A stretch of 64,000 bases of DNA from Macrostomum lignano (lineage: Eukaryota). This document shows, in pieces, positions 41,826 to 57,425 of this stretch. Below the pieces are notes generated by a model that was not told where the DNA came from, did not search any database, and saw only the letters and a program-made list of their open reading frames with translations. Where the stretch lies: NCBI GenBank assembly GCA_002269645.1, contig NIVC01002850.1, positions 62,001 through 126,000 of the forward strand, written 5' to 3'. A program made the position numbers and the translations under genes. Position 1 is the stretch's first letter. Each line of letters begins with the position of its first letter.

Positions 41826-43069
41826 TCTCTTTACAGTTAGTTACAGAGCACTTAGTATATTAATTTATTAAAAACTGTCATTCATTCCGGACTTTATATT
41901 TACAGAACATCGGCTTAGAGCACATATTGCGGATTGTTACATTGTCTAATCCTGTGCCAGACTGTCTCTACCCAGCAAAAGGTCTTGATTTGTTTGAGTG
42001 GCAGCGGATTAATATTCACACGGGCTGTAAAAAAACTAAAGTATGAAAAAATGTATGTCTGTCTATAATATCGTGAGGTCAGGAATCAGAGAAATAGAAT
42101 TTCAAAAGTATTTTGCCTAAAACTCTTTCCTGGCGAAGTTAGCTCCCGATTTTCGGCGATGAAATGAATGATCGGCCATCAGATGAACTAAGATTGTTGT
42201 CAGCATTCATTCTATAGCATCCATGATGTATGCATGGCGTAATTTCCACTAGTCTAAGCGCCATTTCTAATAGTCTAAGCGCCACTACTAGAAGTTTAAG
42301 AGCTACTTCGAATAGTGTAAGCTGTAGAAAAAACAATTACAATAATAACTTATCGATGTGTACATACATGTAAGCTCGCATGTACGGTTGATTTGCGTTA
42401 TGTGGCATTCAGCTAGTTATCGAATGGCGCTCACGCAGAGAGCCCCGGCTAGCCAAATAATTATTTTGATGGACCGACAGACCGTCGATAAGGCGAGAGA
42501 TAACACGGCTAAAATTGGCCCGCCACCGTCCCTAATTAGCTTTAATGGCTACTGCGAGAGCTGAGCTCAGCTGATGCGAACACACAACGCGCGGGCGATA
42601 ATGGACAAAGTGGGTATAAATATTACGCTCGTAGGATACCTACAGCATGCTATCTTTTGCGCTCTAATTTTTAACGAATCTTGGGAAACCTGGATAAAAA
42701 GAAGACTTGTACTTCTCCTCATTTTCTGTGTGCGAAAATTCAGAGCTGTGTGTTTGTGTCTCTCAGTTTATCTCTCTCTCTTGACTGCGACTGGCAGAAA
42801 AAGTCAATAAGTCAGACAGTAAATCGATTTTTTAGGAGTTTTTTTACGAGCTATTTGCTTCGTTGTCTCAGTTTGGCAAAATTATCAATTTTTTTTATTG
42901 AGTTCCTTTAAGCGGATAAAGAAGTAGTTCCTTTTCCGATGTTTAAAAATCATTTTTGTAAACTTTTAAATTCTACTTTGCGAATCCCATGAGCCTAGTA
43001 AAAGAATTCACTGAATTTAAAAATCTGCTCTGTTTAATAATAGATTATTTTCACTTTTTAGTGTATGTA

Positions 43070-43465
43070 GAGCCTCACTCAAAGATAATAGTGCGGAGGG
43101 TAGAAGCCTCACTCAACAATAATATATAGTGCGGAGGGTAGAGAGCCTCACTCAACGATAATATATAGGGCGGAGGGTAGAGAGCCTCACTCAACGATAA
43201 TATATCGAGCGGAGGGTAGAGAGCCTCACTCAACGATAATATATAGAGCGGAGGGTAGAGAGCCTCACTCAACAATAATATAGTGTGGAGGGTAGAGAGC
43301 CTCACTCAACAATAATATATAATGCGGAGGGTAGAGCGCCTCACTTAACAATAATATATAATGCGGAGGGTAGAGAGCCTCACTCAACAATAATATAGTG
43401 CGGAGGGTAGAGAGCCTCACTCAACAATAATATAGTGCGGAGGGTAGACAGCCTCACTCAACAAT
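43070..43465. repeat. Minisatellite, 37-40 bp unit (gagcctcactcaacaataatatatagtgcggagggtaga)
   Basis: About 10 tandem copies. Confidence 0.93.
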
Positions 43466-44226
43466 AGTATAAATTGAATGCTGTAAGCAGGGAGACCTCT
43501 CAAGTATGGAAGACAGAGGGAGTGTATAGTATGCAATATAGAGCTGCTTTGGTCCATTGGCTATGAATACTGCTATAATACGAGCACGCTGCACCCAGAT
43601 AAAAAGTGCCCATCTTGATTGGCGACTGGTTTAGAGAGGACTGCGCTGAGAGAGTGCTAACGAAATTTTCTTTTGCTAGAGTGATCACCGCTTGAAGACC
43701 AGTCAGCCGGTCTCTCCGATCAAGCTTCAGTAGCCGCATAGCAGCATCCCAGGAAAGCAGCTAAATTTGCTATCTCTGCTTTTGCTACTAGGGGTGAAAT
43801 TATAGCTAGTCTACTGTAATCTAACTATATCTCCGGCAGCTTAGTGATGCGTGAGACGGACAGAGAGACAGAAAGCGATGATGAAGCGCCGCGATGAAGG
43901 ATAGGACTCCAGCTATATCTAGGAACTAGCTATTGCTAATATTAGACTAGATGGAGATAAGAAGGCTATTGCAAGAGAGTCTTGAAGGATCGAGTGACAC
44001 AGAGTTGCACTGAGTTGGTATTCTCTGAGGCAAGAGGTGTCAAGCGGTGTGTCCACTCCAGCAGTTGCTGAGCCACTCTCTAAAGTCCTCTCTTCTACAG
44101 ATCTCTCCCCTATCCTCTCTGAAGTCTGCCGGTAACCACTTAAAATCGCCTGATCATATATACTCGTATGCATATTGCACTTCGCGTAGTTACAAAAATT
44201 CGTATCATGTATATATATGTATGTAT

Positions 44227-47200
44227 ACAACAACAACAAACAACAGAGTACGCTGCCAGTTCACAAAAGCAGCGTCAGATGGCGCGCTTCAAAGCTTGGG
44301 CGCGAACAAAAGCCGCACCGCCGGCAGAGTCCGGGGCGCCGGCGTCAGCCAGCAGACAGTCGACGTAGCGCCGAGTCCTCGCCTGTCCCCGCCGGTAGGG
44401 TGCCTGCAACGTAAGCAGCAGCACCTCCTGCACCGGCTCCGGACAGTAGGCCTCGGCGCGGATGACGTGGCCTGCCAGCTGGAGTCGCCGACGGCGCAGC
44501 AGATCGCTAGGACGGGCCAGGCCGGCGCGATGATAGAGCGCCGTGTTGGTGACTCGCTCGTTGCCGATCTTGAAGGCGGCGCGCAGCAGGCCAGCGTGCG
44601 CCGCGTCGACTTGAGCCTCGAGCGAGTCCGTCAGCGTCCAGGTCTCGGCGTTGTATAACAGGACGGTCTCGATCACCGCCTGGAACAGCGCCGCCCTCTG
44701 GCGGTCCGGTAGGGCCTCGGACTGCAGGACTGACCTTATAGAACGAAAGGCAGCCCAAGCAAGTCCTCGGCGACGCCGCAGATTCTCGCGGACGTCGGGA
44801 ACCAGACCGCCGAGGTAGACGAACTGCTGACATCTTGGAAGCTCACTCGCCTGTCCGTCAGCGCCTCGGCAGAAGATTGCAGCCTCGGTGTCGTCCGGCA
44901 CGCATAGCACGACGGTCTTCTGCGTGTTGACCACCAGGCCGACGCTCGCCGCAACGGCAACCAGCCTATCCAGCTGTCGTTGGGCGCCCTCGACGGTCGA
45001 GGACAGCAGGGCGAGGTCATCGGCGTAGCCAAGCACGCTGAGCCGTCTCTCCGGTTGGCGTCGACCCACGCGTCGCCGCAGCAGGAAGCCGTCGTCGTTG
45101 GAAGGCAGAGCAGTCCGTAGCACCCAGTCAAGCACCAGAATAAATAGAAACGGCGCTAGCGTATCTCCCTGGAGCACCCCGGAGGATGTCTCGAAGAAAT
45201 CCGATAGGCCGTCCGGTGTTGAGACAGCAGCCGTCGTGCCGTGGTACAGCGCCATGACAGCAGAAATCAGCAGCTCTGGCACGTTGTACGCACGGAGCAC
45301 CTCTGGGAGCGCGTCCCTCACGACCGAGTCGAAAGCCTTCCTGAAATCGACGAAGATCAGGATCAGGGTCAACTGGCGGATGCGCGCCTCCTCGATGACT
45401 CGTCGAAGAGCCAGGATCTGCGTCACTGTGCCGCGATGGGGCCGGAATCCGTTCTGCTCAGGTCGCAGGTACGGGTCCAGCACAGGCTGTAACCGCGATA
45501 GCAGCATGCGGTTGAACAGCTTCGCGGCGCAGGACTGTAGGCAGATTGGAATGGCGACGATGTGCGCCGTGGTCCATTCGTTTGGCGCCACCTCACCGAA
45601 AAGCACGCGGTTCATCACTCTGGCGACCTCAGTGGCCACGCAGTGGATCCGCAGCGCCTCGGTGGGCACCTCGTCCGGACCAAGCGCTTTGCCGCCCGGC
45701 GTCTGCCGAGCGAACTTCACAACGTCGGCTGTGCTGACTGGGGCAACATTGAAGCTCTCCTCCGCCGGCAACGGCGTCTCCGGCGGCAGCCTCAGATTTT
45801 CTGGAAGCGGAGGGGGCGGCGCGTTGACAATGGCGGCGAAGAACTCGCGCAGCTCGTTCCTGCGCTCATCCGGAGTGTCGCCTGCCAGGTTGAGCGCAAT
45901 GCGCCGCTTTCGCCCCGTCAGAGTGTTGATGGCGGACCAGGCCACGCGCCCTCTGGCATCGGGCCCTGCGGCAGAGACGGCTTGGATGGCGTCATCGACA
46001 GCGGACTGCTGCCGCTGCAGGTAGACAGCCGCCAGAGCCTCCTCCGCCTCGCGAGTTGGCCGCCCACTCAGACGAAGCTTCTCCAGATCTTCCCTCGCTT
46101 CGTCGATCGCGGGGTCGTCCTGCCAGACCGGCTGCCCGCGCTGGGCCGGTCGCATCAGCGGGACTGCTTGCTCCGCAGCGGCTCGAACTGCAGCGCTCAC
46201 CTCCGCGTACTCGGCTCCTCCACGCTTGTCGCCCATCGCAGTGACAAAGGCACCGGCAAAGCGACGTCGCGTCTCGGCGTCTCTGAGCGCGCGGTAGTAG
46301 CGCCGCGGTGGCCGCTTTGGCGGACGGTAGAGCGGGTCCCGAAGCCGAAGGTCGCAGATGAGCAGCCGATGGTCGGACCGCAGAGCCAGCGGCGTAATGG
46401 TGTGGCAGTTGGTGACGCGGCGGCGCTCACGAAAGCGCACAAGCACGTGGTCGAGCTGTGCCAGCCTCCGCGTAGCGTTCCGGCCACGCGCGTTCCGCCG
46501 CCTCCGCTTGCAGCCCACGAAGGTCGCGAGCCTGCCCGGCGACTTGCGGAATCTGGTGTTGGCCGACACCATGTCCTGTCTCTCCAGGAAGTCCTCTAGC
46601 GCTCCGGTGTTGCCGTTCTCGCGCGCTGTCACAAACAGCGATCGCTCGGACCTACGCAGAACTGCGTTCAGGTCTCCGAGAATGACCACTGTGTCACGTT
46701 GCGCCATCTCCTCCACCCGCACCGAGAGTTGCTCGAAGAAGGCCTGAGCCTCATCGGAGCGGGTAGCAGGCGGCGCATACGCGCAGAACAGGCGGGTGTT
46801 CCGGCCGCGAAGCCGGACGTCGACCCGAAGCAGCCGAGAAGACAGGGAGATGCAGCGACAGCTCTGCTGCAGCCTCGGTCCGATCAGCGCTCCAACTCCT
46901 CCACGGCCTCGCTCATCCGCTGAGGTGTACCAGAGTGTCCAACCGGCGCCCAGGTCCTCACAGTGAAGTCCGGGGTCGGCTCTGATAGACACCTCCTGTA
47001 GTGCGATGACATCACAGCTGAGGTCGAGCGCTAGCCTCGCCAGCAGCCCTCTCCGCCATGTGGCCTTGAGAGTGCGGCAGTTCAGCGTCCCGACCCGAAG
47101 CGTGCCCTCTGGTACGGCTGGGGCTCGATGCTGGTGAGCCTCATGGTCCCCGGCGCCACCCGGAAGATCCAATTGGGCCAGCGCAGCAGCAGCTCGGCGG

Positions 47201-47360
47201 GCGGCGCCACGTTGCCGACCTCGCCAGTTTCGCTCGCGACGGCGTTCAACTCGCCGACGCGCGCTCCGCTGCCCTCGCTTGGTCCTGCCGCATTTGGCCG
47301 CCGCAGCAGTTAAGCGCGGCTCTCCACTCTCACCACGAGGAGGTAGCGGCATTTATCTGC
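44227..47360 (-). mobile_element. RTE-like non-LTR retrotransposon (single APE+RT ORF), 5' end interrupted
   Basis: ORF 44275-47352: APE (TLNCRTL, LQEV, AYAP, GDLNA, SDH) and RT (QNGFR, VDFRKAFDSV, GVLQGDTLAPFLF, YADD). Short 3' UTR hairpin ACGCUGC/GCAGCGU and a (TTG)n tail at 44227-44245. Its 5'-most sequence lies at 53173-~53210. Confidence 0.92.
47286..47351 (-). ncRNA. HDV-like self-cleaving ribozyme core at the RTE 5' end (P1 5' strand and J1/2 displaced to 53173-53209)
   Basis: P2 UGCCGC(47351-46)/GCGGCA(47291-86); P3 ACC/GGU; L3 UCCUCGU; P1.1 CC/GG(47325-24); P4 GCCGC..GCGGC; J4/2 C(47296)AAA-U. Order and spacing match the HDV fold. Confidence 0.72.
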
Positions 47361-47475
47361 TTGACTTACTTGACTTAGCTGCAGGGGGCGTCCGGCGGAT
47401 GCAGCGAGGAGGCGGAGGAGACCGCCCATTCCGCTAGCCCCTGGCGACCAACGACTTCCGTTGAAGTGGTGTCGC

Positions 47476-50400
47476 TCAGGGGGACCCGTCGGTCTCGCCT
47501 GCAGCGCGGTCCTCCTCACCGACGGTGGGGAAGAAATCAGCTCGTCCGGTGTCCCTGAGGTACCGGGCGAGCAGTGGGATGCTCTCGGGCCTGCAAACGT
47601 CGGAGAGAACCGGGTTTGGCCCGAGGTGAGTAAGCCTGGCCCTGGTGAAAACCGGGCAGTGGCAGATAAAATGCTCGGCGTTTTCACTGCCTGAGCGGCA
47701 GAAGGGGCACCGCTCCTCGGGTACTTGGCCCTGAAGGAAGCGGTGGCGAGAGAAGCAGCCATGCCCGGAGAGGGCCATGCTAACTGCTCTGAGGTCTCTG
47801 CGGTTGAGCCTGAGGAGGGCTCTACGCAGGAGAGGAGAGGGACAGGGGACGGCAGCACGGGATTGCCTACAATTCCGGGTGTCGTGCCACCTGCGGAGAT
47901 GCTCGGAGTCAGCCCAGCGCTTAACGCGGGAATTGATCACCGAGGCGGGGATGGGGGCACCCGGGCCCGGCCCCAATAGCGCGCCGGCGGAGCCAGCCTT
48001 GGCCAGCAGGTCAGCGCGCTCGTTGCCGAGGAAGCCGGCGTGGCCCGGGATCCATCTGAGCTCCACCTGGTTGCCTAGCGCAAGCCCGTTGAGCTGGGTG
48101 TTGCAGTCCAGGACGGACCTGGAGCTGGCGGTGCTGCGGCAGAGGGCCCGAAGGGCTGCTTGGCTGTCAGAGTGAAAAATAAATTTCCGGCCGCTAAGCT
48201 GCCTTCGGCGCAGCTCTGCCGCGCAGGAGCTGATGGCAAGCACCTCGCTCTGAAAAACACTGGAGTTGAGCCCAGTGTGCTGGGAGTAGCTCCACACCAC
48301 TTCTCCCTTGAAGAAGACGCAAGCTCCGAAGCCTGAAAGACCATGCCTCATAGAGCCGTCAGTGTAACAGTGGACTTCAGAGTCGCTCCAGCTGTCACTC
48401 GCCTCGTGTCGAGGCTGAATGGTGACCTTATACCTTTGGCTCAGGAGAAGGGTGGCTGGGATCGAGTCCGTGAGGATGTTGAGCCCGCCACACTCCTCGA
48501 GAGCCTTGAGGCAGAGGTCAGAGTGCGGGATAAGCGACCGCTTCTTAAAGGCCCGCACTTTCTTGAAGGCCACCCCAGCATCCAGAAGACGCCGGGTGCT
48601 CTTCGCCGCCTCTCCTTTGATATAAATATCCAAAGGAGGGGCGCAGAGGAAGGCATTCATGCCTTCAAAAGGAGTAGAGGGTGGAGCGCCCATAGTCATG
48701 CGGCAGGCTCTGCCCTGGATTTTGTAGAGAGCGTCGAGGTTGCTCTTGACGCTCAGGCCGCTAGCCCACACGAGGCTGGCGTAACTGATCGAGGGGCGGA
48801 TGATGGCAGTGTAAATCCACCACAGCTTCCTGGGGGTGAGCCCCCAGGTGGTGCCCACGGCGCGCCTGATCTGAGCCAGTACAGCCAGGGCTTTTTTGGC
48901 TTTAGTTTGAATGTGCGGAGTCCAGTTAAGCCTGTGGTCCAGAGTGAGGCCCAGGCAGCGGACCTGCTTCTCCATGGAAATATTCTTTCCATAGAGGGTG
49001 AGGGGCTTAATGGTCCAGAGCAGTTTGTTGGTAAACATGACTGCTGTGGTTTTCGACTCTGAGAGTCTAAGGCCACATTGGTCTGCCCAACGCTCCGCTC
49101 GTCCCAGAAAGCCCTGCAGAAGGTCTCTGATGGTATCAACCGAGGGGCCCGCGCATATCGCGGTCACATCATCGGCATAGCCCACCTTGAGAATGGGGTC
49201 GTGGAGATCACTGCAAAGCAACTCATCCATGACCATGTTCCAGAGAACGGGGGTGAGAACGCCGCCCTGGGGGCCCCCTTTCAGGACAGGCACCGAAAGA
49301 GAGCTGCCGCTCAGGTGGGCCACAACAGTGCGGTTTCGGATCATGAACATGATCCACCGGACAAGGTGAGGGTGCGTGGCCCTGGATTCCAGGGCTCTGC
49401 AAAAGGCCTCGAAGATGACGTTGTCGAAGGCCCCCTCAATGTCCAGGAAAAGCGAGAGGGCAAAGCCGCTGCCAAGAACGGCCCTCTCCAGGAAGTCAAC
49501 AATGACATGGAGAGCACTCTCGGTTGACCTGCCCGCGCGGAAGGCGTGCTGGTTCTGCGAGAGTGGGAAGCGCTTCAGCTCGACCGAAAGTAGGCGCCAA
49601 AGCACCAGTCTCTCGAGGAGCTTGAGGCAGAAAGAAGTGAGGCTGATAGGCCTGAAGGCCTTCACCGATTGGTAGTCGCTCTTTCCAGGCTTGGGGATAA
49701 AGACCACCCGGGCCTCTCTCCATGCAACTGGTACATAGCCCAGCTCCATACAAGCTCGAAGGAGACGACAGAGCAGGTCCAGGAAGCGGTGGTTTTTCAC
49801 CGCCTCGTGCAAGAACGCTGGGTAGATGCCGTCGGGCCCAGGCGCCTTGAACGGGTTAAAGGACCTTGCCGCTCTAATAATGCGGTCTTTGGTGATCATA
49901 GACTTTGCTAGGCCTTGCCCTCCCACTGTGTGGTCGGGCGGGCCCTGCTGAGTCGGAGATTTAGGGAAAAAAACTGTTGAGCATGAGCTCTAGAGTCTCT
50001 TCCGAACTCTCTGTGACCGAGCCGTCAGGTCTCTTCACAACAGAGAGTTTAGAAAAACGGTCATTAGTGAGTGCCTTAACCACGCGGGCTACGGGGCGAG
50101 AGCCCTCAAGCCCTTCGCAATATTGGCGCCACTTGGCCGTCTTGGCCCTTCTGACTTGGCCCTTAAACTCGTGGATCGCACGGGTATAGGCCTCTCTGTC
50201 AGATGGGTCTTTGGTTTTGAGCGCTCGCCTTTGGAGGGTCCTGGCTCGGCGCCGAAGGGCCCCGAGCTCTGGGTTCCACCAGGGAGCAGATTTCTTGCCT
50301 TTATAGGCCTTTAGGGGGCAGGCTGCTTCAAAGGCAGTGGTGATCGCCCCGCCCAGGGAGGAGGCGAGATCGTCCACCACCTGGCAGTCAGAGAGGTCAC

Positions 50401-51180
50401 TGGGGGGTCAAGATCCCGAAGGCCGCGGCTCAGCTTCGAGCCAAAGGCGGCCCAATCGGTGTTTCTGACGTTCCGACTCCAAGTGACCTTAGGCTTTTGC
50501 TTGGTCGGCCCAATGCAAAAGCGGATAAAGCGGTGGTCCGAGAGCGAGTCCTCGTCCCACACTCGCCAGCCCGTAACTGCGGAAAGCAGTCCGGGTGAGG
50601 CGATGGTGGTGTCGATGACTTCGGCCCACCGCCCATTATTGAACGTTGGTGCATTGCTCACGTTACAGAAGTTGAGGTTAGTGCTGCTGACATAGGCCAG
50701 CAGCTCCTCGCCTCTGCTATTGATGTTCTTGCTGCCCCAATGCAGGTGGTGTGCGTTCACATCCCCTGCAATGAGCAGCTCGAACCGATGGGACGCAGCA
50801 TAGTCAGTAAGGTTGACTAACGCGTCGCAGACAACTGGGGCATCGCCCGGGAAATAGGCAGAAGCTACCAGCACAGGTTTATTGGGAATGAGGTTATTGA
50901 TTTGAACAACACAGATGTCCCCAGTCGAGAGATCAGGTCTCATCCATGCCTCAAAAGCTTTTGCAGCAAAGACCAGAGATCTTGGGCGAGGCTGAGAGCC
51001 CGCCATGCAAAAACAGTGGTAGCCAGATGGCACATTATTTGGCTTACCTTTAGTCATCCAGGGCTCCTGTACGAAGACCAGGCCCGGAAGCTGTTGCTCT
51101 GCCGTGCGCATCAGGTTGACCGACGCCGCCACGCAGTGCTGGGTGTTGATCTGCAGACACCAGGTAGTCGTTGGCATCAT
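47476..51180 (-). CDS. LINE ORF2 (APE, RT, RNase H) with two compensating 1-nt frameshifts
   Basis: ORFs 50311-51180 and 47476-49926 share a frame; the linker 49961-50380 is shifted. The breaks map to homopolymers G6 (50402-50407) and A7 (49967-49973). Confidence 0.85.
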
Positions 51181-52697
51181 TGCAGATCGGATGTTGCAGC
51201 CGCCAGGAGTTCCTCCTCCTCCTCGGCGCTCACCGGCTTCGGGTCGGGGTCGCCGGTGTCCATGGGCTCTTCTTCAGCAAAAGGCCCCCGATTGGCCGGA
51301 AGGCAGTAGGCAGCGTTCGCCGCCCTTTGCCCACCATCCATGGGGTCCTCCGCCTCAGATTGGCCCAATGCCCTGGAGCAGCCAGCCGCCTGGGCAGGCG
51401 GGTCCGTCTCCAGTCGGCCCTGCCCCGAGGGGTTGGGCCCAGCTGGGACGTCCCCACCCTCCCTGGACGAACTGGTGCGCCTAGGCGTCCCGGCGACCTC
51501 TCGCCTCAGCTGGGAGATTTTGGCGGTACGGACTGCCTCAGCTGCACGCTGGTACAGGCCGCGCCGCTTGGTGCTACGCGCCGGGCGTCGGTCGCCTCCG
51601 CCCTCAGCAGCGCGCTCAGCTTTGCCCGCGCGGCCGTGCTGCCGGGCAGGGCGGTTTGCTTTGGCAGTCTGAGCAGAGGCTTGCGCCTCGGCCCCGGCCG
51701 CCTCCGCATCCCGCCCGCCCTGCTCACTGCCACGGGGAGGGTCGGCCTCGTAGGAGCGGATGCGCAGCTTCCAAAGGCCGACGTTGATGAAGCTGCCGTG
51801 TGGATAACGCCTCATCCAGGCGTCCGACAGCCCCAGGATGGCTGTGAAGCCAGTGCCGTCGGTGCGCTTAAGGGTGTCATGCACCACTAGGCCCGCGGCG
51901 GGAAGCTCCCGGTTGACTGCTAGCAGTCCTTTCCGGAGCTCGTCAGCAGAGGTAACAACGCTCCTGGCCGGGACCCAGATTCGATGCCTCTTGGTCCGGG
52001 GGCGCTCGTCCTCTCTGCAGAAGGCTAGGTTGAGGTCCCAGCTCTGCTCGGGCAGCAGCTCAAGGAGCCGCCGACCCGAGTCAGCATCACTGGGCCAAAT
52101 GAGAAGGCACGAGTCCCTCGTCGCATTCGAATGAATGTTCAGACGCGTGCCCTTCAGAGTTTGCTTCCACAGGAGGCCATCAACGGCACTTCTCACCTGC
52201 TTCAGCTGATCGGGAGACAGGCGCGCGTCCTTTCCCAGGATGACAACCGCCGGTTGCCTCTTTGCCGCATCAGCGTAGGAGGCCCGGGGGTCAGTGGAGC
52301 TTTCTTCAGGTGGGCTGTCCACCCTCCCGGCTGCATCGGCCTCCCTATCCTGGGCAGGGGCTTCCGTGGGCTCGAGGCCCTCTTCCGCCACCGCCCCAGA
52401 CTGGGGAGCTTCCGCTGCCGCGGGCCGTTGGCCCCTGGCACCGGTTTGGCTTCCGCCCTCCTTGGCCCGCCTCGCCTTGTTAAGTCGACGGCGGGCAGCT
52501 CCAGAGGTGGTGCTGCGTTTCTTAGCAGCTGGAGTAGCAGGTGTCTTCTCGGAGGCACCGCTCAGAGTTGGCTCCACGGGTCTCGCCGAGGCGTCCCCGA
52601 TGGTAGCAGGTGGTATGGCCGAGGAGTCCACGGCCCCAGCCGAGGCCGGAGGCACTGTGTCATCCACAGCCGGTTTGTTACTTCGGTTAGAAGCCAT
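51177..52697 (-). CDS. LINE ORF1 (nucleic-acid chaperone; DUF4780-like region)
   Basis: Open frame from MASNRSNK. The segment RIWVP...LLAVNRELP...LGLS...VGLWKLRIR resembles ORF1 of LOA-type elements (from memory, not searched). The stop overlaps the ORF2 ATG. Confidence 0.75.
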   Translation of the reverse strand: MASNRSNKPAVDDTVPPASAGAVDSSAIPPATIGDASARPVEPTLSGASEKTPATPAAKKRSTTSGAARRRLNKARRAKEGGSQTGARGQRPAAAEAPQSGAVAEEGLEPTEAPAQDREADAAGRVDSPPEESSTDPRASYADAAKRQPAVVILGKDARLSPDQLKQVRSAVDGLLWKQTLKGTRLNIHSNATRDSCLLIWPSDADSGRRLLELLPEQSWDLNLAFCREDERPRTKRHRIWVPARSVVTSADELRKGLLAVNRELPAAGLVVHDTLKRTDGTGFTAILGLSDAWMRRYPHGSFINVGLWKLRIRSYEADPPRGSEQGGRDAEAAGAEAQASAQTAKANRPARQHGRAGKAERAAEGGGDRRPARSTKRRGLYQRAAEAVRTAKISQLRREVAGTPRRTSSSREGGDVPAGPNPSGQGRLETDPPAQAAGCSRALGQSEAEDPMDGGQRAANAAYCLPANRGPFAEEEPMDTGDPDPKPVSAEEEEELLAAATSDLQ

Positions 52698-53191
52698 TGG
52701 CTGGAAGTAAAAAGGTGGGACTTCCTGCAGAACACAGGCAAAGAGCCGCAAGGCCGCAACCCCAAACCAAGCGGCAGGCCCCCAAAAAGCAAAATACCAC
52801 CCTGCGGGGGACCCAAAAGCGCAAGGGGAACCGTTAGCGACCAGACTACTCCCTGGCCAAGCGTCCATCAGCACGGAGTTACACTGGGACATTAGAGGGT
52901 GCGTTTATGGTCACACCAGGACCCGGCGCCAACGAATCAGCTCGGCAGGGCCCAAGGGGGCCTGCCTTAACACCCACGGGACGAGTACCCATCGAAGTGC
53001 GCCTTGCAAGGTGAAAATCAGGAGACAGAGTCTCTTGAGCTATCAGCCCGCCAGGGGAGGCAGGTGTGAGCATCGCTGGCTGGGATAAAGGCCATACCAG
53101 TCTCATACTGCACAGATAGTTCACCACGCCATTACGTGCAGGACCCGGGGTCCTGGGGGCAACAGCCCCGGCGCATTTATCTGCACCGTGG

Positions 53192-53797
53192 TGCAAATAA
53201 ATTAAGACTGCAAATAAATTAAGACTGCAAATAAATTAAGACTGCAAATAAATTAAGACTGCAAATAAATTAAGACTGCAAATAAATTAAGACTGCAAAT
53301 AAATTAAGACTGCAAATAAATTAAGACTGCAAATAAATTAAGACTGCAAATAAATTAAGACTGCAAATAAATTAAGACTGCAAATAAATTAAGACTGCAA
53401 ATAAATTAAGACTGCAAATAAATTAAGACTGCAAATAAATTAAGACTGCAAATAAATTAAGACTGCAAATAAATTAAGACTGCAAATAAATTAAGACTGC
53501 AAATAAATTAAGACTGCAAATAAATTAAGACTGCAAATAAATTAAGACTGCAAATAAATTAAGACTGCAAATAAATTAAGACTGCAAATAAATTAAGACT
53601 GCAAATAAATTAAGACTGCAAATAAATTAAGACTGCAAATAAATTAAGACTGCAAATAAATTAAGACTGCAAATAAATTAAGACTGCAAATAAATTAAGA
53701 CTGCAAATAAATTAAGACTGCAAATAAATTAAGACTGCAAATAAATTAAGACTGCAAATAAATTAAGACTGCAAATAAATTAAGACTGCAAATAAAT
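53192..53797. repeat. Homogeneous 17 bp satellite (gactgcaaataaattaa), about 36 copies
   Basis: Perfect tandem array abutting the displaced RTE 5' end. Confidence 0.97.
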
Positions 53798-53859
53798 AAG
53801 TATAAGTATATAAGTATATAAGTGTAAGTATATAAGTATATAAGTATATATATAGTTTA

Positions 53860-56800
53860 AATCCAAGACATCTATAATACCCTTCTATGATATGAAGAGC
53901 GGAGAGAGGTAAATAATTAATTGAGACTAGCTACAACTCCCCCGAGACTGTGCGATAATAGTGTGGAGATGAACAAAATGTGAAATTCTTCCATATTTTT
54001 TGTGGAATTTATCCACTCATGTCAAAATTAATTCGCGGCGCTTGGGCTCCGTATGGACCGTAGAGACCTTACTCATAGAGCACTCAGACCCTGCTCATAT
54101 AGGACCAAGACCCTACTCATAGAGGACTCGGACCCTGATCATAGAGAAAACAAGCCCTACTCAGACAAGATCGACTTAGTCCTTACTCAGCGAGAAATCT
54201 ATTTCAGAGATTAATGAGATGTTGCGAATGTAAGGAGTGATGCTGAGAAGGAGTGATGCTGAGAAGGAGTGATGCTGAGAAGGAGTGATACTGAGAGGGA
54301 GTGATACTGAGAATGATGCTGAGAGGGAGTGATGCTGAGAAGGATTGATGCTGAGAGGGAGTGATACTGAGAGGGAGTGATGTTGAGAAGGAGTGATGCT
54401 GAGAGGGAGTGATGCTGAGAGGGAGTGATGCTGAGAGGGAGTGATGCTGAGAGGGAATAAGTATGTATATATATATATATATATATATATAGTTTAAATC
54501 CAAGACATCTATAATACCCTTCTATGATATGAAGAGCGGAGAGAGGTAAATAATTAATTGAGACTACAACTCCCCCGAGACTGTGCGATAATAGTGTGGA
54601 GATGAACAAAATGTGAAATTCTTCCATATTTTTTGTGGAATTTATCCACTCATGTCAAAATTAATTCGCGGCGCTTGGGCTCCGTATGGACCGTAGAGAC
54701 CTTACTCATAGAGCACTCAGACCCTGCTCATATAGGACCAAGACCCTACTCATAGAGGACTCGGACCCTGATCATAGAGAAAACAAGCCCTACTCAGACA
54801 AGATCGACTTAGTCCTTACTCAGCGAGAAATCTATTTCAGAGATTAATGAGATGTTGCGAATGTAAGGAGTGATGCTGAGAAGGAGTGATGCTGAGAAGG
54901 AGTGATGCTGAGAAGGAGTGATACTGAGAGGGAGTGATGCTGAGAATGATGCTGAGAAGGAGTGATGCTGAGAAGGATTGATGCTGAGAGGGAGTGATAC
55001 TGAGAGGGAGTGGTACTGAGAGGGAGTGATGCTGAGAGGGAGTGATACTGAGAGGGAGTGGTACTGAGAGGGAATGATGCTGAGAGGGAATGATGCTGAG
55101 AATGATGTTGAGAAGGAGTGATGCTGAGAGGAAGTGATGCTGAGAAGGATTGATGCTGAGGGGGAGTGATGCTGAGAGGGAGTGATACTGAGAGGGAGTG
55201 GTACTGAGAGGGAGTGATGCTGAGAGGGAATGATGCTGAGAATGATGTTGAGAAGGAGTGATGCTGAGAGGAAGTGATGCTGAGAAGGAGTGATACTGAG
55301 AGGGAGTGATGCTGAGAGGGAGTGATGCTGAGAGGGAGTGATGCTGAGAGGGAGTGATGCTGAGAGGGAGTGATGCTGAGAGGGAGTGATGCTGAGAGGG
55401 AGTGATGCTGAGAGGGAGTGATGCTGAGAGGGAGTGATACTGAGAGGGAGTGATGCTGAGAGGGAGTGATGCTGAGAGGGAATGATGCTGAGAATGATGC
55501 TGAGAAGGAGTGATGCTGAGAGGGAGTGATGCTGAGAGGGAGTGATACTGAGAGGGAGTGATGCTGAGAGTGGTGATGCTGAGAGGGAGTGATACTGAGA
55601 GGGAGTGATGCTGAGAGGGAATGATGCTGAGAATGATGCTGAGAAGGAGTGATGCTGAGAGGGAGTGATGCTGAGAGGGAATGATGCTGAGAATGATGCT
55701 GAGAAGGATTGATGCTGAGAGGGAGTGATACTGAGAGGGAGTGGTACTGAGAGGGAGTGATGCTGAGAGGGAATGATGCTGAGAATGATGCTGAGAAGGA
55801 GTGATGCTGAGAGGGAGTGATGCTGAGAGGGAGTGATGCTGAGAATGATGCTGAGAAGGAGTGATGCTGAGAAGGATTGATGCTGAGAGGGAGTGATACT
55901 GAGAGGGAGTGGTACTGAGAGGGAGTGATGCTGAGAGGGAGTGATACTGAGAGGGAGTGATGCTGAGAGGGAGTGATGCTGAGAGGGAGTGATGCTGAGA
56001 GGGAGTGATGCTGAGAGGGAGTGATGCTGAGAGGGAGTGATGCTGAGAGGGAGTGATGCTGAGAGGGAGTGATGCTGAGAGGGAGTGATACTGAGAGGGA
56101 GTGATGCTGAGAGGGAGTGATGCTGAGAGGGAATGATGCTGAGAATGATGCTGAGAAGGAGTGATGCTGAGAGGGAGTGATGCTGAGAGGGAGTGATACT
56201 GAGAGGGAGTGATGCTGAGAGTGGTGATGCTGAGAGGGAATGATGCTGGGAGTGATGCTGAGAGGGAATGATGCTGAGAATGATGCTGAGAAGGAGTGAT
56301 GCTGAGAGGGAGTGATGCTGAGAGGGAATGATGCTGAGAATGATGCTGAGAAGGATTGATGCTGAGAGGGAGTGATACTGAGAGGGAGTGATGTTGAGAA
56401 GGAGTGATGCTGAGAGGGAATGATGCTGAGAATGATGTTGAGAAGGAGTGATGCTGAGAGGAAGTGATGCTGAGAAGGATTGATGCTGAGGGGGAGTGAT
56501 ACTGAGAGGGAGTGATGCTGAGAGGGAGTGATGCTGAGAGGGAATGATGCTGAGAATGATGCTGAGAGGGAGTGATGCTGAGAAGGAGTGATGCTGAGAG
56601 GGAATGATGCTGAGAATGATGCTGAGAAGGAGTGATGCTGAGAGGGAGTGATGCTGAGAAGGATTGATGCTGAGGGGGAGTGATACTGAGAGGGAGTGAT
56701 GCTGAGAGGGAGTGATGCTGAGAGGGAATGATGCTGAGAATGATGCTGAGAGGGAGTGATGCTGAGAAGGAGTGATGCTGAGAGGGAGTGATGCTGAGAA

Positions 56801-56912
56801 TGATGCTGAGAGGGAGTGATGCTGAGAGGGAGTGATGCTGAGAGGGAGTGATACTGAGAGGGAGTGATGCTGAGAGGGAGTGATGCTGAGAGGGAGTGAT
56901 GCTGAGAGGGAG
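53860..56912. repeat. 627-bp-period tandem duplication, each copy ending in a 16 bp minisatellite (gagtgatgctgagagg)
   Basis: The unique block starting agtttaaatcc occurs at 53864 and 54491. The minisatellite spans ~54228-54455 in copy 1 and ~54865-56912 in copy 2. Confidence 0.93.
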
Positions 56913-57425
56913 GTGTCAGTTGTGTGGAATATTAATGTCACTATAGGATTTCATTGCCAAGTGCATTTTACTGACTTGAACCCTTTGAGTGAGATTCTTG
57001 ACTGGATTTCCACCGACTGCATGGGATTTTCCTGTGTTGGCCCAGCGTAGCGAGGGGTCGCCTATTCAGCAACAAAAGCGCGCAATTCACCGTGCAGATT
57101 AATGATTGAATGTCCTGCTGCTCTCAAGTCTCAATGAAGAAGATATTGCGACTGTGCAGGTATTACCAGCTAAGAATTCTGGGTGGCTTTGTGTACTGAT
57201 GATTGATCTGCTCTGGCTATAGAAAATATGCTTTATTTGCAAGTGAATTTTCAGCTCTATGGGTCTTTTAAAGGGCCTGTATGAGCTCAATAATACTGAT
57301 TGGTCACTTTTTCAGTGTTGATTGTAAATAAATTCACCGTAATATACTCATATTTCAACTTACCGCATTCAAAAGTATATATTTGATCATTGACTTACTG
57401 ACCCCAAACACCTGCTTGCAGACAG

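What the first reader, a model, noticed from the sequence alone, without database searches (positions are those of the whole stretch)
47286..53209. Hidden HDV-like ribozyme at the RTE 5' end, split by a 5.8-kb insertion
Seen after excising the insert and one TSD (minus strand): AGUCUU-AA-[UUUAUUUGCAC-CACG-GUGCAGAUAAA hairpin]-UGCCGC-U-ACC-UCCUCGU-GGU-GAGAGU-GG-AGA-GCCGC...GCGGC-CAAA-U-GCGGCA. This gives P2 (6 bp), P3, an HDV-type L3, a two-pair P1.1, P4 and a catalytic-C-position J4/2 (C47296) in canonical order. P1 (AGUCUU/GAGAGU) has one G-G mismatch. An alternative helix CACCACG(53193-87)/CGUGGUG(47337-31) would sequester L3/P3, suggesting a conformational switch. The element's ATG (47352) lies at the J1/2-P2 junction, so the ORF is read through the ribozyme. 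Established: HDV-like ribozymes process 5' ends of R2, RTE and some other non-LTR elements. Inference: a probably uncatalogued ribozyme of this family that ORF- or contiguous-motif scans would miss here.
Basis: partly seen in the sequence, partly recalled or inferred. Interest (0 to 1): 0.85.

Follow-up and report, generated by a model that had tools for sequence, protein, structure and literature searches.

The report
Split HDV-like ribozyme in flatworm RTE
The 5' end of a flatworm (Macrostomum-type) RTE retrotransposon carries a self-cleaving-ribozyme fold of the hepatitis-delta-virus type. In this copy a second retrotransposon has cut the fold in two and its first helix pairs poorly, so this is an uncatalogued but unsurprising member of a known class.

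Summary
A 5,812-bp non-LTR element (47361-53172) with a perfect 12-bp target-site duplication separates the P1/hairpin part from the P2-to-P2' core.

The core is HDV-like. Rfam drz-Agam-1 scores 28.8 bits (cut-off 37), with P3/L3 ACCUCCUCGUGGU identical to the family consensus. An HDV descriptor hits only this site in the window.

The strongest support comes from eight related RTE 5' ends in metagenome and Macrostomum-run contigs. On a 9-sequence alignment, 95.5% of pair cells are paired, against 32-48% when partners are slid. Seventeen pairs carry compensatory changes. P1 is perfect and covarying in five relatives, and it starts at the element's first base.

Corrections:
- P1 in the window copy is no better than chance (4-5 of 6 pairs).
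- The conserved J4/2 cytosine is C47297, not C47296.
- The proposed switch helix is not conserved.
- The P1 5' strand lies in a 17-nt unit repeated 35.6 times. Such arrays recur in relatives and begin at the predicted cleavage site.
- Relatives carry a helix inside L3 and escape Rfam.

Verdict: a real ribozyme-family element, a new member of a known kind. This copy is disabled, and cleavage is untested.

The parts
53192..53797 (-). Tandem array of a 17-nt unit (GUCUUAAUUUAUUUGCA on the minus strand), 35.6 copies at 100% identity. Each unit is nt 1-17 of the element: the P1 5' strand, a linker, and most of the 5' half of the J1/2 hairpin.
   Evidence: TRF, the repeat finder D1, and 35 exact copies counted. 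Homologous 16-17-nt arrays occur in L012, L018, L003, L017 and L001.
53203..53209 (-). Candidate P1 5' strand of the last unit. The family register is GUCUUA, with G1 at 53208.
   Evidence: Pairing with GAGAGU is 5 of 6 (one G-G mismatch) or 4 of 6, which is not above chance in this copy. In relatives the homologous position forms a perfect P1.
53176..53201 (-). J1/2 hairpin (P1.2-type peripheral helix): 11 bp with loop CACG.
   Evidence: Fold energy -11.8 kcal/mol. Conserved with covariation in 9 of 9 sequences. Found by family model R1 at 53137-53208, 27.7 bits.
53173..53184 (-). Target-site duplication copy 1 (GCAGATAAATGC) of the inserted element. It lies inside the hairpin's 3' half, the ATG and the start of P2.
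   Evidence: family D3.
47361..53172 (-). Inserted non-LTR retrotransposon, 5,812 bp. It has ORF1 (571 aa), an APE endonuclease and RT+RNase H. ORF2 is broken into three ORFs. Its 3' end is ...TAAGTCAAGTAAGTCAA.
   Evidence: ORFs, Pfam, boundaries.
47349..47360 (-). Target-site duplication copy 2 (GCAGATAAATGC).
47346..47351 (-). P2 5' strand UGCCGC. The ATG of the RTE ORF (47352-47350) overlaps its start.
   Evidence: P2 is fully compensated in L012 (CGUUGGC/GCCAACG).
47332..47344 (-). P3 (ACC 47344-42 / GGU 47334-32) closing L3 UCCUCGU (47341-35). C47340 and C47339 are the P1.1 cytosines.
   Evidence: Identical to the drz-Agam-1 consensus ACCUCCuCGuGGU. P3 covaries as GUC/GAC, GCC/GGC, GCC/GGU and ACC/GGU.
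47324..47331 (-). P1 3' strand GAGAGU (47331-26) followed by the P1.1 GG (47325-24).
   Evidence: GG is invariant in 9 of 9 sequences.
47300..47320 (-). P4: GCCGC (47320-16) / GCGGC (47304-00), extended by two further pairs, with an 11-nt distal part.
   Evidence: Invariant 5 bp plus two covarying extension pairs.
47292..47299 (-). J4/2 GGCCAAAU. The conserved G-C-N-A-A motif puts the catalytic-position cytosine at C47297.
   Evidence: Alignment A2 columns 140-147 and the Rfam alignment.
47286..47291 (-). P2 3' strand GCGGCA.
44275..47352 (-). RTE-like single ORF of 1025 aa (APE endonuclease + reverse transcriptase), read through the ribozyme core. The element's (TTG)n 3' tail ends near 44228.
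   Evidence: The (TTG)n tail is shared with L003 and L017.

Best explanation
The outer element is a ~3.16-kb RTE-like non-LTR retrotransposon of a Macrostomum-type flatworm. It has a single APE+RT ORF and a (TTG)n tail.

Its first ~100 nt encode an HDV-like nested double pseudoknot in this order:
- P1 (6 bp, starting at the element's first base)
- a stable J1/2 hairpin (P1.2-type)
- P2, P3 and a 7-nt L3 (UCCUCGU)
- P1.1 (CC/GG)
- P4
- J4/2 GC-N-AA, with the catalytic-position C at 47297
- P2'

Inferred function: in the family, this fold cuts the element RNA out of read-through transcripts just 5' of G1. That defines the element's 5' end and leaves an uncapped RNA whose AUG sits about 33 nt in, at the hairpin/P2 junction. 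The ORF is then translated through the ribozyme sequence.

In this copy a second non-LTR element inserted into the hairpin/AUG region with a 12-bp target-site duplication, putting 5.8 kb between P1/P1.2 and the core. The P1 pairing itself is poor. The ribozyme is therefore disabled here, and it may already have been slow or inactive before the insertion.

Shown: the sequence anatomy, the insertion and its duplication, homology to a family with strong helix covariation, and conserved core nucleotides.

Inferred: self-cleavage, the cleavage site, and the role in 5' processing and translation.
For: Anatomy and target-site duplication.

ORF and host:
- EN+RT ORF.
- Best protein relatives are Macrostomum lignano entries and 3.3-4.2-kb contigs.

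RNA-model evidence:
- Rfam drz-Agam-1 at 28.8 bits, E=4e-4 locally, with P3/L3 identical to the consensus.
- The descriptor hits only this site in 128 kb of both strands.
- Family model R1 finds both halves (50.6 and 27.7 bits) and nothing else in the window.

Family covariation (9 sequences):
- 95.5% of cells paired, against 32-48% when partners are slid.
- 17 pairs with changes on both sides, against 1-6 in slid controls.
- 0 of 500 shuffles reach the observed values.

P1 in relatives:
- GUGCCA/UGGCAC (L003), GAGCCA/UGGCUC (L013), GUUCCU/AGGGAC (L014), GUGUUG/CAACAC (L017, L018).
- In each, the only 6-of-6 complement upstream is at the element's first base.

Other points:
- P2 is fully compensated in L012.
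- RNAalifold recovers the nested helices unaided.
- The J4/2 motif G-C-N-A-A and the P1.1 CC/GG are invariant.
- The junction ATG is kept in 7 of 9 sequences.

Precedent:
- HDV-like ribozymes cleave at the 5' end of RTE and other non-LTR elements (PMC6765202, PMC3774820).
- A stable J1/2 helix accelerates drz-Agam-2-1 (PMC4908430).
Against: - No cleavage assay and no mapped RNA 5' ends.
- The window copy's P1 is 4-5 of 6 with a G-G mismatch next to the putative cleavage site, which is no better than chance. L012 (4 of 6) and L001 (no P1) are also imperfect.
- No Rfam HDV-family model reaches its gathering score in the window, and relatives get no hit even at E<=5.
- P4, P1.1 and most of P2 never vary, so they give no covariation evidence. 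They also lie in coding sequence (AAAK.G).
- The sample is small: 9 sequences, with L017 and L018 closely related. I derived the pseudoknot part of the structure from these same sequences.
- No other copy of the window's own subfamily could be retrieved. L020 is 5'-truncated.
Confidence: 0.8

Rival explanations
1. The family has a working ribozyme, but this copy's lineage had already lost cleavage before the 5.8-kb insertion. On this view the window carries a relic: the P1 strands no longer match.
For: P1 is 4 of 6 in the family register or 5 of 6 with a G-G mismatch at the second pair. L012, which has the same GUCUUA 5' strand, also pairs poorly. The window has lost the L3 helix that all 8 relatives keep.
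Against: The ORF is intact at 1025 aa and the 35.6-copy array is 100% identical, so the copy looks young. Every other core position is canonical, and L3 matches a proven ribozyme family's consensus. A 1x1 G-G mismatch flanked by a 4-bp run and an A-U pair may still allow slow cleavage.
Confidence: 0.4
2. The conserved fold is a structured 5' leader used for cap-independent translation or for binding the element's protein, and it does not self-cleave.
For: The AUG is embedded at the hairpin/P2 junction and the ORF runs through the fold. Relatives have a helix in L3 where canonical HDV ribozymes have a 7-nt loop, and no Rfam HDV model recognises them.
Against: Features needed only for catalysis are kept: the G-C-N-A-A J4/2 motif, the CC/GG P1.1, and a P1 that begins exactly at the element's first base. 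The 17-nt units start at that same base, which fits an RNA end made there. Translation and cleavage roles coexist in known cases (reviewed in PMC4908430 and PMC6765202).
Confidence: 0.1
3. The resemblance is chance in a GC-rich coding region. The apparent conservation reflects protein constraint on the N-terminus.
For: The descriptor gives 0.18 hits per shuffled window. The GCCGC/GCGGC strands are invariant and encode Ala-rich peptide. The Rfam score is below threshold.
Against: P1 pairs non-coding bases upstream of the ATG with coding bases and covaries in four independent lineages. P3, the L3 helix, the hairpin and P2 of L012 covary. The peptide itself is poorly conserved and varies in length. 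The motif sits exactly at the 5' end of the element.
Confidence: 0.04

Closest known systems
drz-Agam-1 (Rfam RF01787), an HDV-like ribozyme of Anopheles gambiae
   Same: It is the best Rfam match, covering model positions 1-82 of 82. P3/L3/P3' ACCUCCUCGUGGU is identical to the consensus. The order P2-P3-L3-P1'-GG-P4-J4/2-P2' is the same, and the conserved J4/2 C aligns to C47297.
   Different: The score of 28.8 bits is below the gathering score of 37. The P1, P2 and P4 sequences are unrelated. The window has a 26-nt J1/2 hairpin. The host is a flatworm RTE. Relatives are not detected at all.
drz-Agam-2 family: HDV-like ribozymes with a structured J1/2 (P1.2) domain. I recall from memory, not from a text I could open, that Ruminski et al. 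2011 map them to mosquito RTE elements.
   Same: Both have a stable helix between P1 and P2, which in drz-Agam-2-1 speeds cleavage by pulling P1 and P2 together (PMC4908430). On the recalled mapping, both also sit at the 5' end of an RTE-type element.
   Different: I could not compare sequences. The Macrostomum hairpin is short (10-14 bp), AT-rich and carries the start codon at its base. The 17-nt terminal arrays and the L3 helix of relatives are not features I know from that family (from memory, not tested).
R2 / R4 / Baggins / L1Tc 5' HDV-like ribozymes
   Same: Same logic: self-cleavage frees the element RNA from a co-transcript and sets its 5' end. An ORF or its initiation region overlaps the ribozyme (PMC3774820, PMC6765202, PMC3185411).
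   Different: Those elements belong to other non-LTR clades. R2 is site-specific, and many R2 ribozymes use upstream 28S sequence for P1. Here all of P1 belongs to the element: units are absent from 3' flanks and covary with the element.
Twister-variant ribozyme of Perere-3 (RTE clade) in Schistosoma mansoni
   Same: It is also a flatworm RTE-clade element with a self-cleaving ribozyme at its 5' end that allows downstream translation after loss of the cap (PMC8501958).
   Different: The ribozyme class differs (twister versus HDV-like). In Perere-3 the P1 5' strand comes from the target-site duplication, whereas here it is internal to the element.
Genomic HDV ribozyme
   Same: The double-pseudoknot order is the same. 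L3 is UCCUCGU against my remembered UCCUCGC for HDV. P1.1 is CC/GG, and J4/2 is G-C-N-A-A as in G74-C75-G76-A77-A78 (from memory).
   Different: P1 is 6 bp rather than 7. In relatives G1 pairs with C rather than forming the G-U wobble. There is a large J1/2 hairpin, and the context is a retrotransposon.

Membership tests
HDV-like self-cleaving ribozymes | Nested double-pseudoknot order: P1 - J1/2 - P2 - P3 - L3 - P3' - P1' - P1.1 - P4 - J4/2 - P2' | tested here: met
   All segments are present in this order in the reconstructed window RNA and in 8 relatives. 95.5% of pair cells are paired, against 32-48% in slid controls.
HDV-like self-cleaving ribozymes | P1 of 6-7 contiguous base pairs beginning at the cleavage site (G1) | tested here: inconclusive
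Relatives L003, L013, L014, L017 and L018 have 6 of 6, covarying and starting at the element's first base. L012 has 4 of 6 and L001 has none.
HDV-like self-cleaving ribozymes | 3-bp P3 closing an L3 of about 7 nt whose two cytosines pair with GG after P1' (P1.1) | tested here: met
   Window: ACC-UCCUCGU-GGU, then GAGAGU-GG, identical to the drz-Agam-1 consensus. CC and GG are invariant in 9 of 9 sequences, so there is no covariation evidence for P1.1. Relatives differ: U-CC-[helix]-A.
HDV-like self-cleaving ribozymes | Catalytic cytosine in J4/2 (C75 equivalent), followed by N-A-A | tested here: met
N-G-C-[C/A/U]-A-A-N-N occurs in 9 of 9 sequences. This corresponds to C47297.
HDV-like self-cleaving ribozymes | Score at or above the gathering threshold of a curated Rfam HDV-family model | tested here: not met
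   There is no hit at gathering score on the window. The best is RF01787 at 28.8 bits against 37. Relatives get no hit at E<=5. This tests the existing models, not the fold.
HDV-like self-cleaving ribozymes | Mg2+-dependent site-specific self-scission giving 5'-OH and 2',3'-cyclic phosphate ends | not testable with these tools
   This needs in-vitro transcription and cleavage assays.
RTE-clade non-LTR retrotransposons | Single ORF with N-terminal APE endonuclease and RT, no ORF1, length about 3.2 kb, short 3' UTR ending in a simple repeat | tested here: met
   The 1025-aa ORF contains Exo_endo_phos and RVT_1. The element is about 3,157 nt without the insert. It has a (TTG)n tail.
RTE-clade non-LTR retrotransposons | Phylogenetic placement of the RT within the RTE clade | not tested
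   No reference RTE sequences were available for a tree. The clade label rests on architecture only.

The most novel reading that the evidence does not exclude
Macrostomum-type RTEs may carry a distinct sub-type of HDV-like ribozyme with two unusual features.

1. In most members P3 continues into a long helix. The two P1.1 cytosines bulge from it, giving U-CC-[helix]-A in place of the 7-nt L3.

2. The first 17 nt of the cleaved RNA (the P1 strand plus most of the 5' half of the J1/2 hairpin) are repeatedly re-added at the 5' end. For example, the reverse transcriptase could jump templates after reaching the ribozyme-made end. This builds arrays of up to at least 35 units, each offering a further P1 substrate strand.
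Probability: 0.3. Interest if true: 0.7.

Novelty: new member of a known kind. Interest (0 to 1): 0.45.

Why it matters
HDV-like ribozymes at the 5' ends of RTE elements are established, so the window adds a flatworm family rather than a new principle. Three points give it some value.

1. The family escapes the Rfam models. Only comparison of element 5' ends reveals it, so ribozyme censuses of flatworm genomes are probably incomplete.
2. A parasitic flatworm's RTE (Perere-3) uses a twister variant at the same position (PMC8501958). RTE lineages within one phylum have therefore recruited different ribozyme classes for the same job.
3. The relatives' helix inside L3, and the 17-nt terminal arrays that start at the predicted cleavage site, offer testable handles. 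The first bears on how much the HDV core tolerates. The second bears on how non-LTR reverse transcription finishes at an RNA 5' end.

Tried and rejected
- **Rfam gathering scan of the whole window:** no hit.
- **Rfam E-value scan of ten related loci:** no HDV-family hit.
- **Other copies of the window's own subfamily:**
  - The exact-protein look-up found nothing.
  - The closest retrievable relative, L020 (86% aa identity), is 5'-truncated just after the ribozyme.
  - L004 lacks the 5' end.
- **Viral-contig scan for the P4-J4/2-P2' pattern:** 14 matches, all chance hits in GC-rich phage DNA with no upstream P2, L3 or GG.
present in the window but not conserved.
- **A second complement to the P1 5' strand immediately 3' of P2':** 4-6 bp in 6 of 8 sequences, but no better in energy than shuffles, so not claimed.
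- **The 17-nt array as a host target satellite supplying P1, as 28S does for R2:** rejected for three reasons.
  - Units are absent from 3' flanks.
  - L013 and L014 carry the segment once, next to unrelated flanks.
  - The unit's hairpin half covaries with the element's unique half.
- **Type-B relatives** (different N-terminus: L002, L015, L016): no ribozyme found by Rfam or by family model R1.
- **Literature:** Ruminski et al. 2011 and Webb et al. 2009 are not held in the library, so I cite them only through papers that cite them.


Full report
**1. What is in the sequence**

- Upstream part: AGUCUU (53209-04), AA, and the hairpin UUUAUUUGCAC-CACG-GUGCAGAUAAA (53201-53176).
- Core: UGCCGC, U, ACC (47344-42), UCCUCGU (47341-35), GGU (47334-32), GAGAGU (47331-26), GG (47325-24), AGA, GCCGC (47320-16) ... 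GCGGC, CAAAU and GCGGCA (47291-86).

The two parts are separated by 47361-53172 (5,812 bp). This stretch is flanked by a perfect 12-bp direct repeat, GCAGATAAATGC, at 53184-53173 and 47360-47349.

The insert is another non-LTR retrotransposon on the same strand. It has a 571-aa ORF1, an APE endonuclease, and RT plus RNase H. Its second ORF is broken into three pieces.

The outer element has one 1025-aa ORF with Exo_endo_phos and RVT_1 domains, starting at ATG 47352. It ends in a (TTG)n tail near 44228. Without the insert it is about 3.16 kb, which is RTE-like in architecture.

Its best protein relatives are Macrostomum lignano entries (up to 94% identity over part of the protein) and 3.3-4.2-kb environmental or sequencing-run contigs. 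The window is therefore most likely from Macrostomum or a close relative. That is an inference.

**2.

The proposed P1 5' strand and most of the 5' half of the hairpin belong to a 17-nt unit, GUCUUAAUUUAUUUGCA. The unit is repeated 35.6 times at 100% identity (53192-53797).

**3. Is the core more than chance?**
- The Rfam gathering scan of the window finds nothing.
- A permissive scan of 47200-47420 gives drz-Agam-1 (RF01787) at 28.8 bits (cut-off 37), E=4e-4 for that 221-nt search. It covers the whole model. P3/L3/P3' ACCUCCUCGUGGU is identical to the family consensus.
- A descriptor for the HDV core, written after seeing the sequence, hits only 47286-47351 on either strand. It gives 0.18 hits per dinucleotide-shuffled window.

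Taken alone, the motif is moderately significant. Its position exactly at the start codon of an RTE makes it much more so.

**4. Relatives**

I retrieved eight related 5' ends with the ribozyme region: L001, L003, L012, L013, L014, L017, L018 and L019. All share one layout:
- a 6-nt strand beginning with G
- 1-3 nt of linker
- a 10-14-bp AT-rich hairpin
- UGCCGC-type P2
- a 3-bp P3, then U-CC
- a 6-nt P1 3' strand, then GG
- GCCGC/GCGGC P4
- N-G-C-[C/A/U]-A-A-N-N
- P2'

RNAalifold, given only the MAFFT alignment A2, recovers the hairpin, P2, P3 and P4. It also recovers a further helix, described below.

Counting my full pseudoknotted structure on A2:
- 95.5% of 311 cells are paired, against 32-48% when partners are slid by 1-3 columns.
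- 17 pairs have changes on both sides, against 1-6 in slid controls.
- None of 500 shuffles reaches the observed values.

P1 is perfect in five relatives:
- GUGCCA/UGGCAC (L003)
- GAGCCA/UGGCUC (L013)
- GUUCCU/AGGGAC (L014)
- GUGUUG/CAACAC (L017, L018)

In each of these, the only perfect complement in the upstream region lies exactly at the first base of the element. P2 is completely compensated in L012 (CGUUGGC/GCCAACG). P3 occurs as GUC/GAC, GCC/GGC, GCC/GGU and ACC/GGU.

Caveats:
- There are only nine sequences, two of them close relatives.
- P4, P1.1 and most of P2 never vary.
- I derived the pseudoknot from these same sequences.

A family covariance model (R1) finds both halves in the window (50.6 and 27.7 bits). 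It finds no other instance there or in the type-B relatives.

**5.

(a) Catalytic C. By family alignment, P4's 3' strand is the first GCGGC (47304-00) and J4/2 is GGCCAAAU. G and C of the G-C-N-A-A motif are invariant. The next base is C, A or U. The catalytic-position cytosine is therefore C47297, not C47296. The Rfam alignment agrees.

(b) P1 in this copy. The family register (G1 = 53208) gives 4 of 6. Two other upstream 6-mers also reach 5 of 6. P1 here is supported only by positional homology. L012 carries the same GUCUUA strand with a different P1 3' strand and is also imperfect. L001 has no P1.

(c) The switch helix. CACCACG/CGUGGUG is real (-13 kcal/mol; 1% of shuffles reach it). None of the eight relatives has a hairpin-top/L3 complement better than shuffles. 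A conserved conformational switch is not supported.

(d) The ATG. Its position at the hairpin/P2 junction is confirmed and conserved in 7 of 9 sequences. It is mutated to ATT in L003 and AAG in L013. A continuous ORF runs from it in the window, L001 and L012.

**6. How it most likely works**

By analogy with characterised cases, the ribozyme would cut read-through transcripts 5' of G1. This would define the element's RNA 5' end and leave an uncapped RNA that is translated from the embedded AUG.
- Cleavage at the 5' end of RTE and other non-LTR elements: PMC3774820, PMC6765202.
- A stable J1/2 helix accelerating drz-Agam-2-1: PMC4908430.

In the present locus the fold is interrupted by 5.8 kb inside the hairpin/AUG region and is certainly disabled. 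Given the P1 mismatch, I put about 40% on the copy having been impaired even before the insertion. None of the catalytic steps is shown here.

**7. Unusual family features**

First, all eight relatives replace the 7-nt L3 with U-CC-[4-6-bp covarying helix with a variable loop]-A. RNAalifold extends P3 by a U-A pair, so the two P1.1 cytosines bulge from a continuous helix. These relatives get no Rfam HDV hit at all, yet they are the ones with perfect, covarying P1. The window copy has the canonical loop instead. I do not know of HDV-like ribozymes with a helix in L3. That statement is from memory, and I found nothing on it in the searchable library.

Second, the 16-17-nt terminal arrays recur:
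- L012: at least 8 copies.
- L018: at least 7 copies.
- L003 and L017: about 1.8 copies.
- L001: about 1.35 copies.
- L013 and L014: the same segment once, next to unrelated flanks.

The duplicated segment always starts at G1. It ends 1-4 nt before the top of the hairpin's 5' half. Units are absent from 3' flanks, and their hairpin half covaries with the unique 3' half. They are therefore part of the element and not a target satellite.

A start at G1 fits addition of units at the ribozyme-made RNA end. One possibility is reverse-transcriptase template jumping, perhaps onto unit-length RNAs released by successive cleavages of multi-unit leaders. The fixed end at nt 17 is unexplained, and this model is speculative.

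**8. Comparison and novelty**

The closest catalogued family is drz-Agam-1, but the match is below threshold. In function and architecture the element resembles the P1.2-containing drz-Agam-2 ribozymes, which I recall (without being able to open the source) as RTE-associated. Within flatworms, the RTE-clade Perere-3 of Schistosoma uses a twister variant at the same position (PMC8501958). R2 of a planarian has an HDV-like ribozyme (PMC3774820). I found no paper on ribozymes in Macrostomum.

I file the window feature as a new member of a known kind. The L3-helix form and the arrays could amount to a new variant if cleavage is confirmed. I score interest at 0.45: the feature is real and uncatalogued, but its class and role are expected and this copy is dead.

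Noticed in passing
window 53192-53797 (minus strand); L012 1-144; L018 1-127; L003 1-30; L017 1-30; L001 79-112: 16-17-nt tandem arrays sit at the 5' end of ribozyme-bearing RTE relatives. The repeated segment is nt 1-17 of the element, starting exactly at the predicted cleavage site (G1) and ending 1-4 nt before the hairpin loop. The window has 35.6 copies at 100% identity. The origin is unexplained; template jumping at the RNA 5' end is a hypothesis.
   Followed up: partly
L003 44-100, L013 84-125, L014 212-248, L017 59-98, L018 156-195, L012 170-197, L001 146-173, L019 46-73 (approximate): All eight relatives have a covarying 4-6-bp helix inserted in L3 (U-CC-[helix]-A), and no Rfam HDV model detects them. 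The window copy alone has the plain 7-nt L3.
   Followed up: partly
L002 1-700; L015 1-90; proteins P0004, P0007, P0009, P0012, P0016, P0017, P0019: A second 5' type exists in the same RTE family. The ORF starts MTS..RR.YSR..LL.LR, and an unrelated 5' UTR precedes it. Neither Rfam nor family model R1 finds a ribozyme there. This suggests modular exchange of 5' ends.
   Followed up: partly
window 47361-53172 (minus strand): The inserted element is a non-LTR retrotransposon with ORF1 (571 aa, no Pfam hit), an APE endonuclease and RT+RNase H. ORF2 is split into three ORFs (51180-50311, 50380-49961, 49926-47476). It has a 12-bp target-site duplication and its 3' end is TAAGTCAAGTAAGTCAA. I did not check whether it has a 5' ribozyme of its own.
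   Followed up: no
window 44228-44245 (minus strand); L003 and L017 3' ends: The RTE ends in a (TTG)n/(GTT)n simple-repeat tail, shared with relatives. The element sits in TA-rich microsatellite, with (TATACTTA)n on the 5' side (53798-53850) and TATACATACATATATA on the 3' side.
   Followed up: partly
window 43069-43471: A 39-bp tandem repeat of 10.6 copies (91% matches) lies about 750 nt beyond the RTE 3' end. Its relation to the element is unknown.
   Followed up: no
window 54234-54456 and 54867 to beyond 56000: There are long arrays of a 16-bp unit (GGAGTGATGCTGAGAG; over 70 copies). A 44-bp repeat is duplicated at 54064-54163 and 54697-54796. The 710-aa 'ORF' at 54809-56941 is probably an artefact of this repeat.
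   Followed up: no
L020 60-80: The closest retrievable relative (86% aa identity) is a copy truncated at its 5' end within or just after J4/2-P2', so it lacks the ribozyme.
   Followed up: yes
window 47285-47281 and the equivalent positions in L003, L012, L014, L017, L018: The P1 5' strand also has a 4-6-bp complement immediately 3' of P2' in 6 of 8 sequences. This is a possible alternative pairing enclosing the whole ribozyme. Its energy is no better than shuffles, though the fixed position is suggestive.
   Followed up: partly
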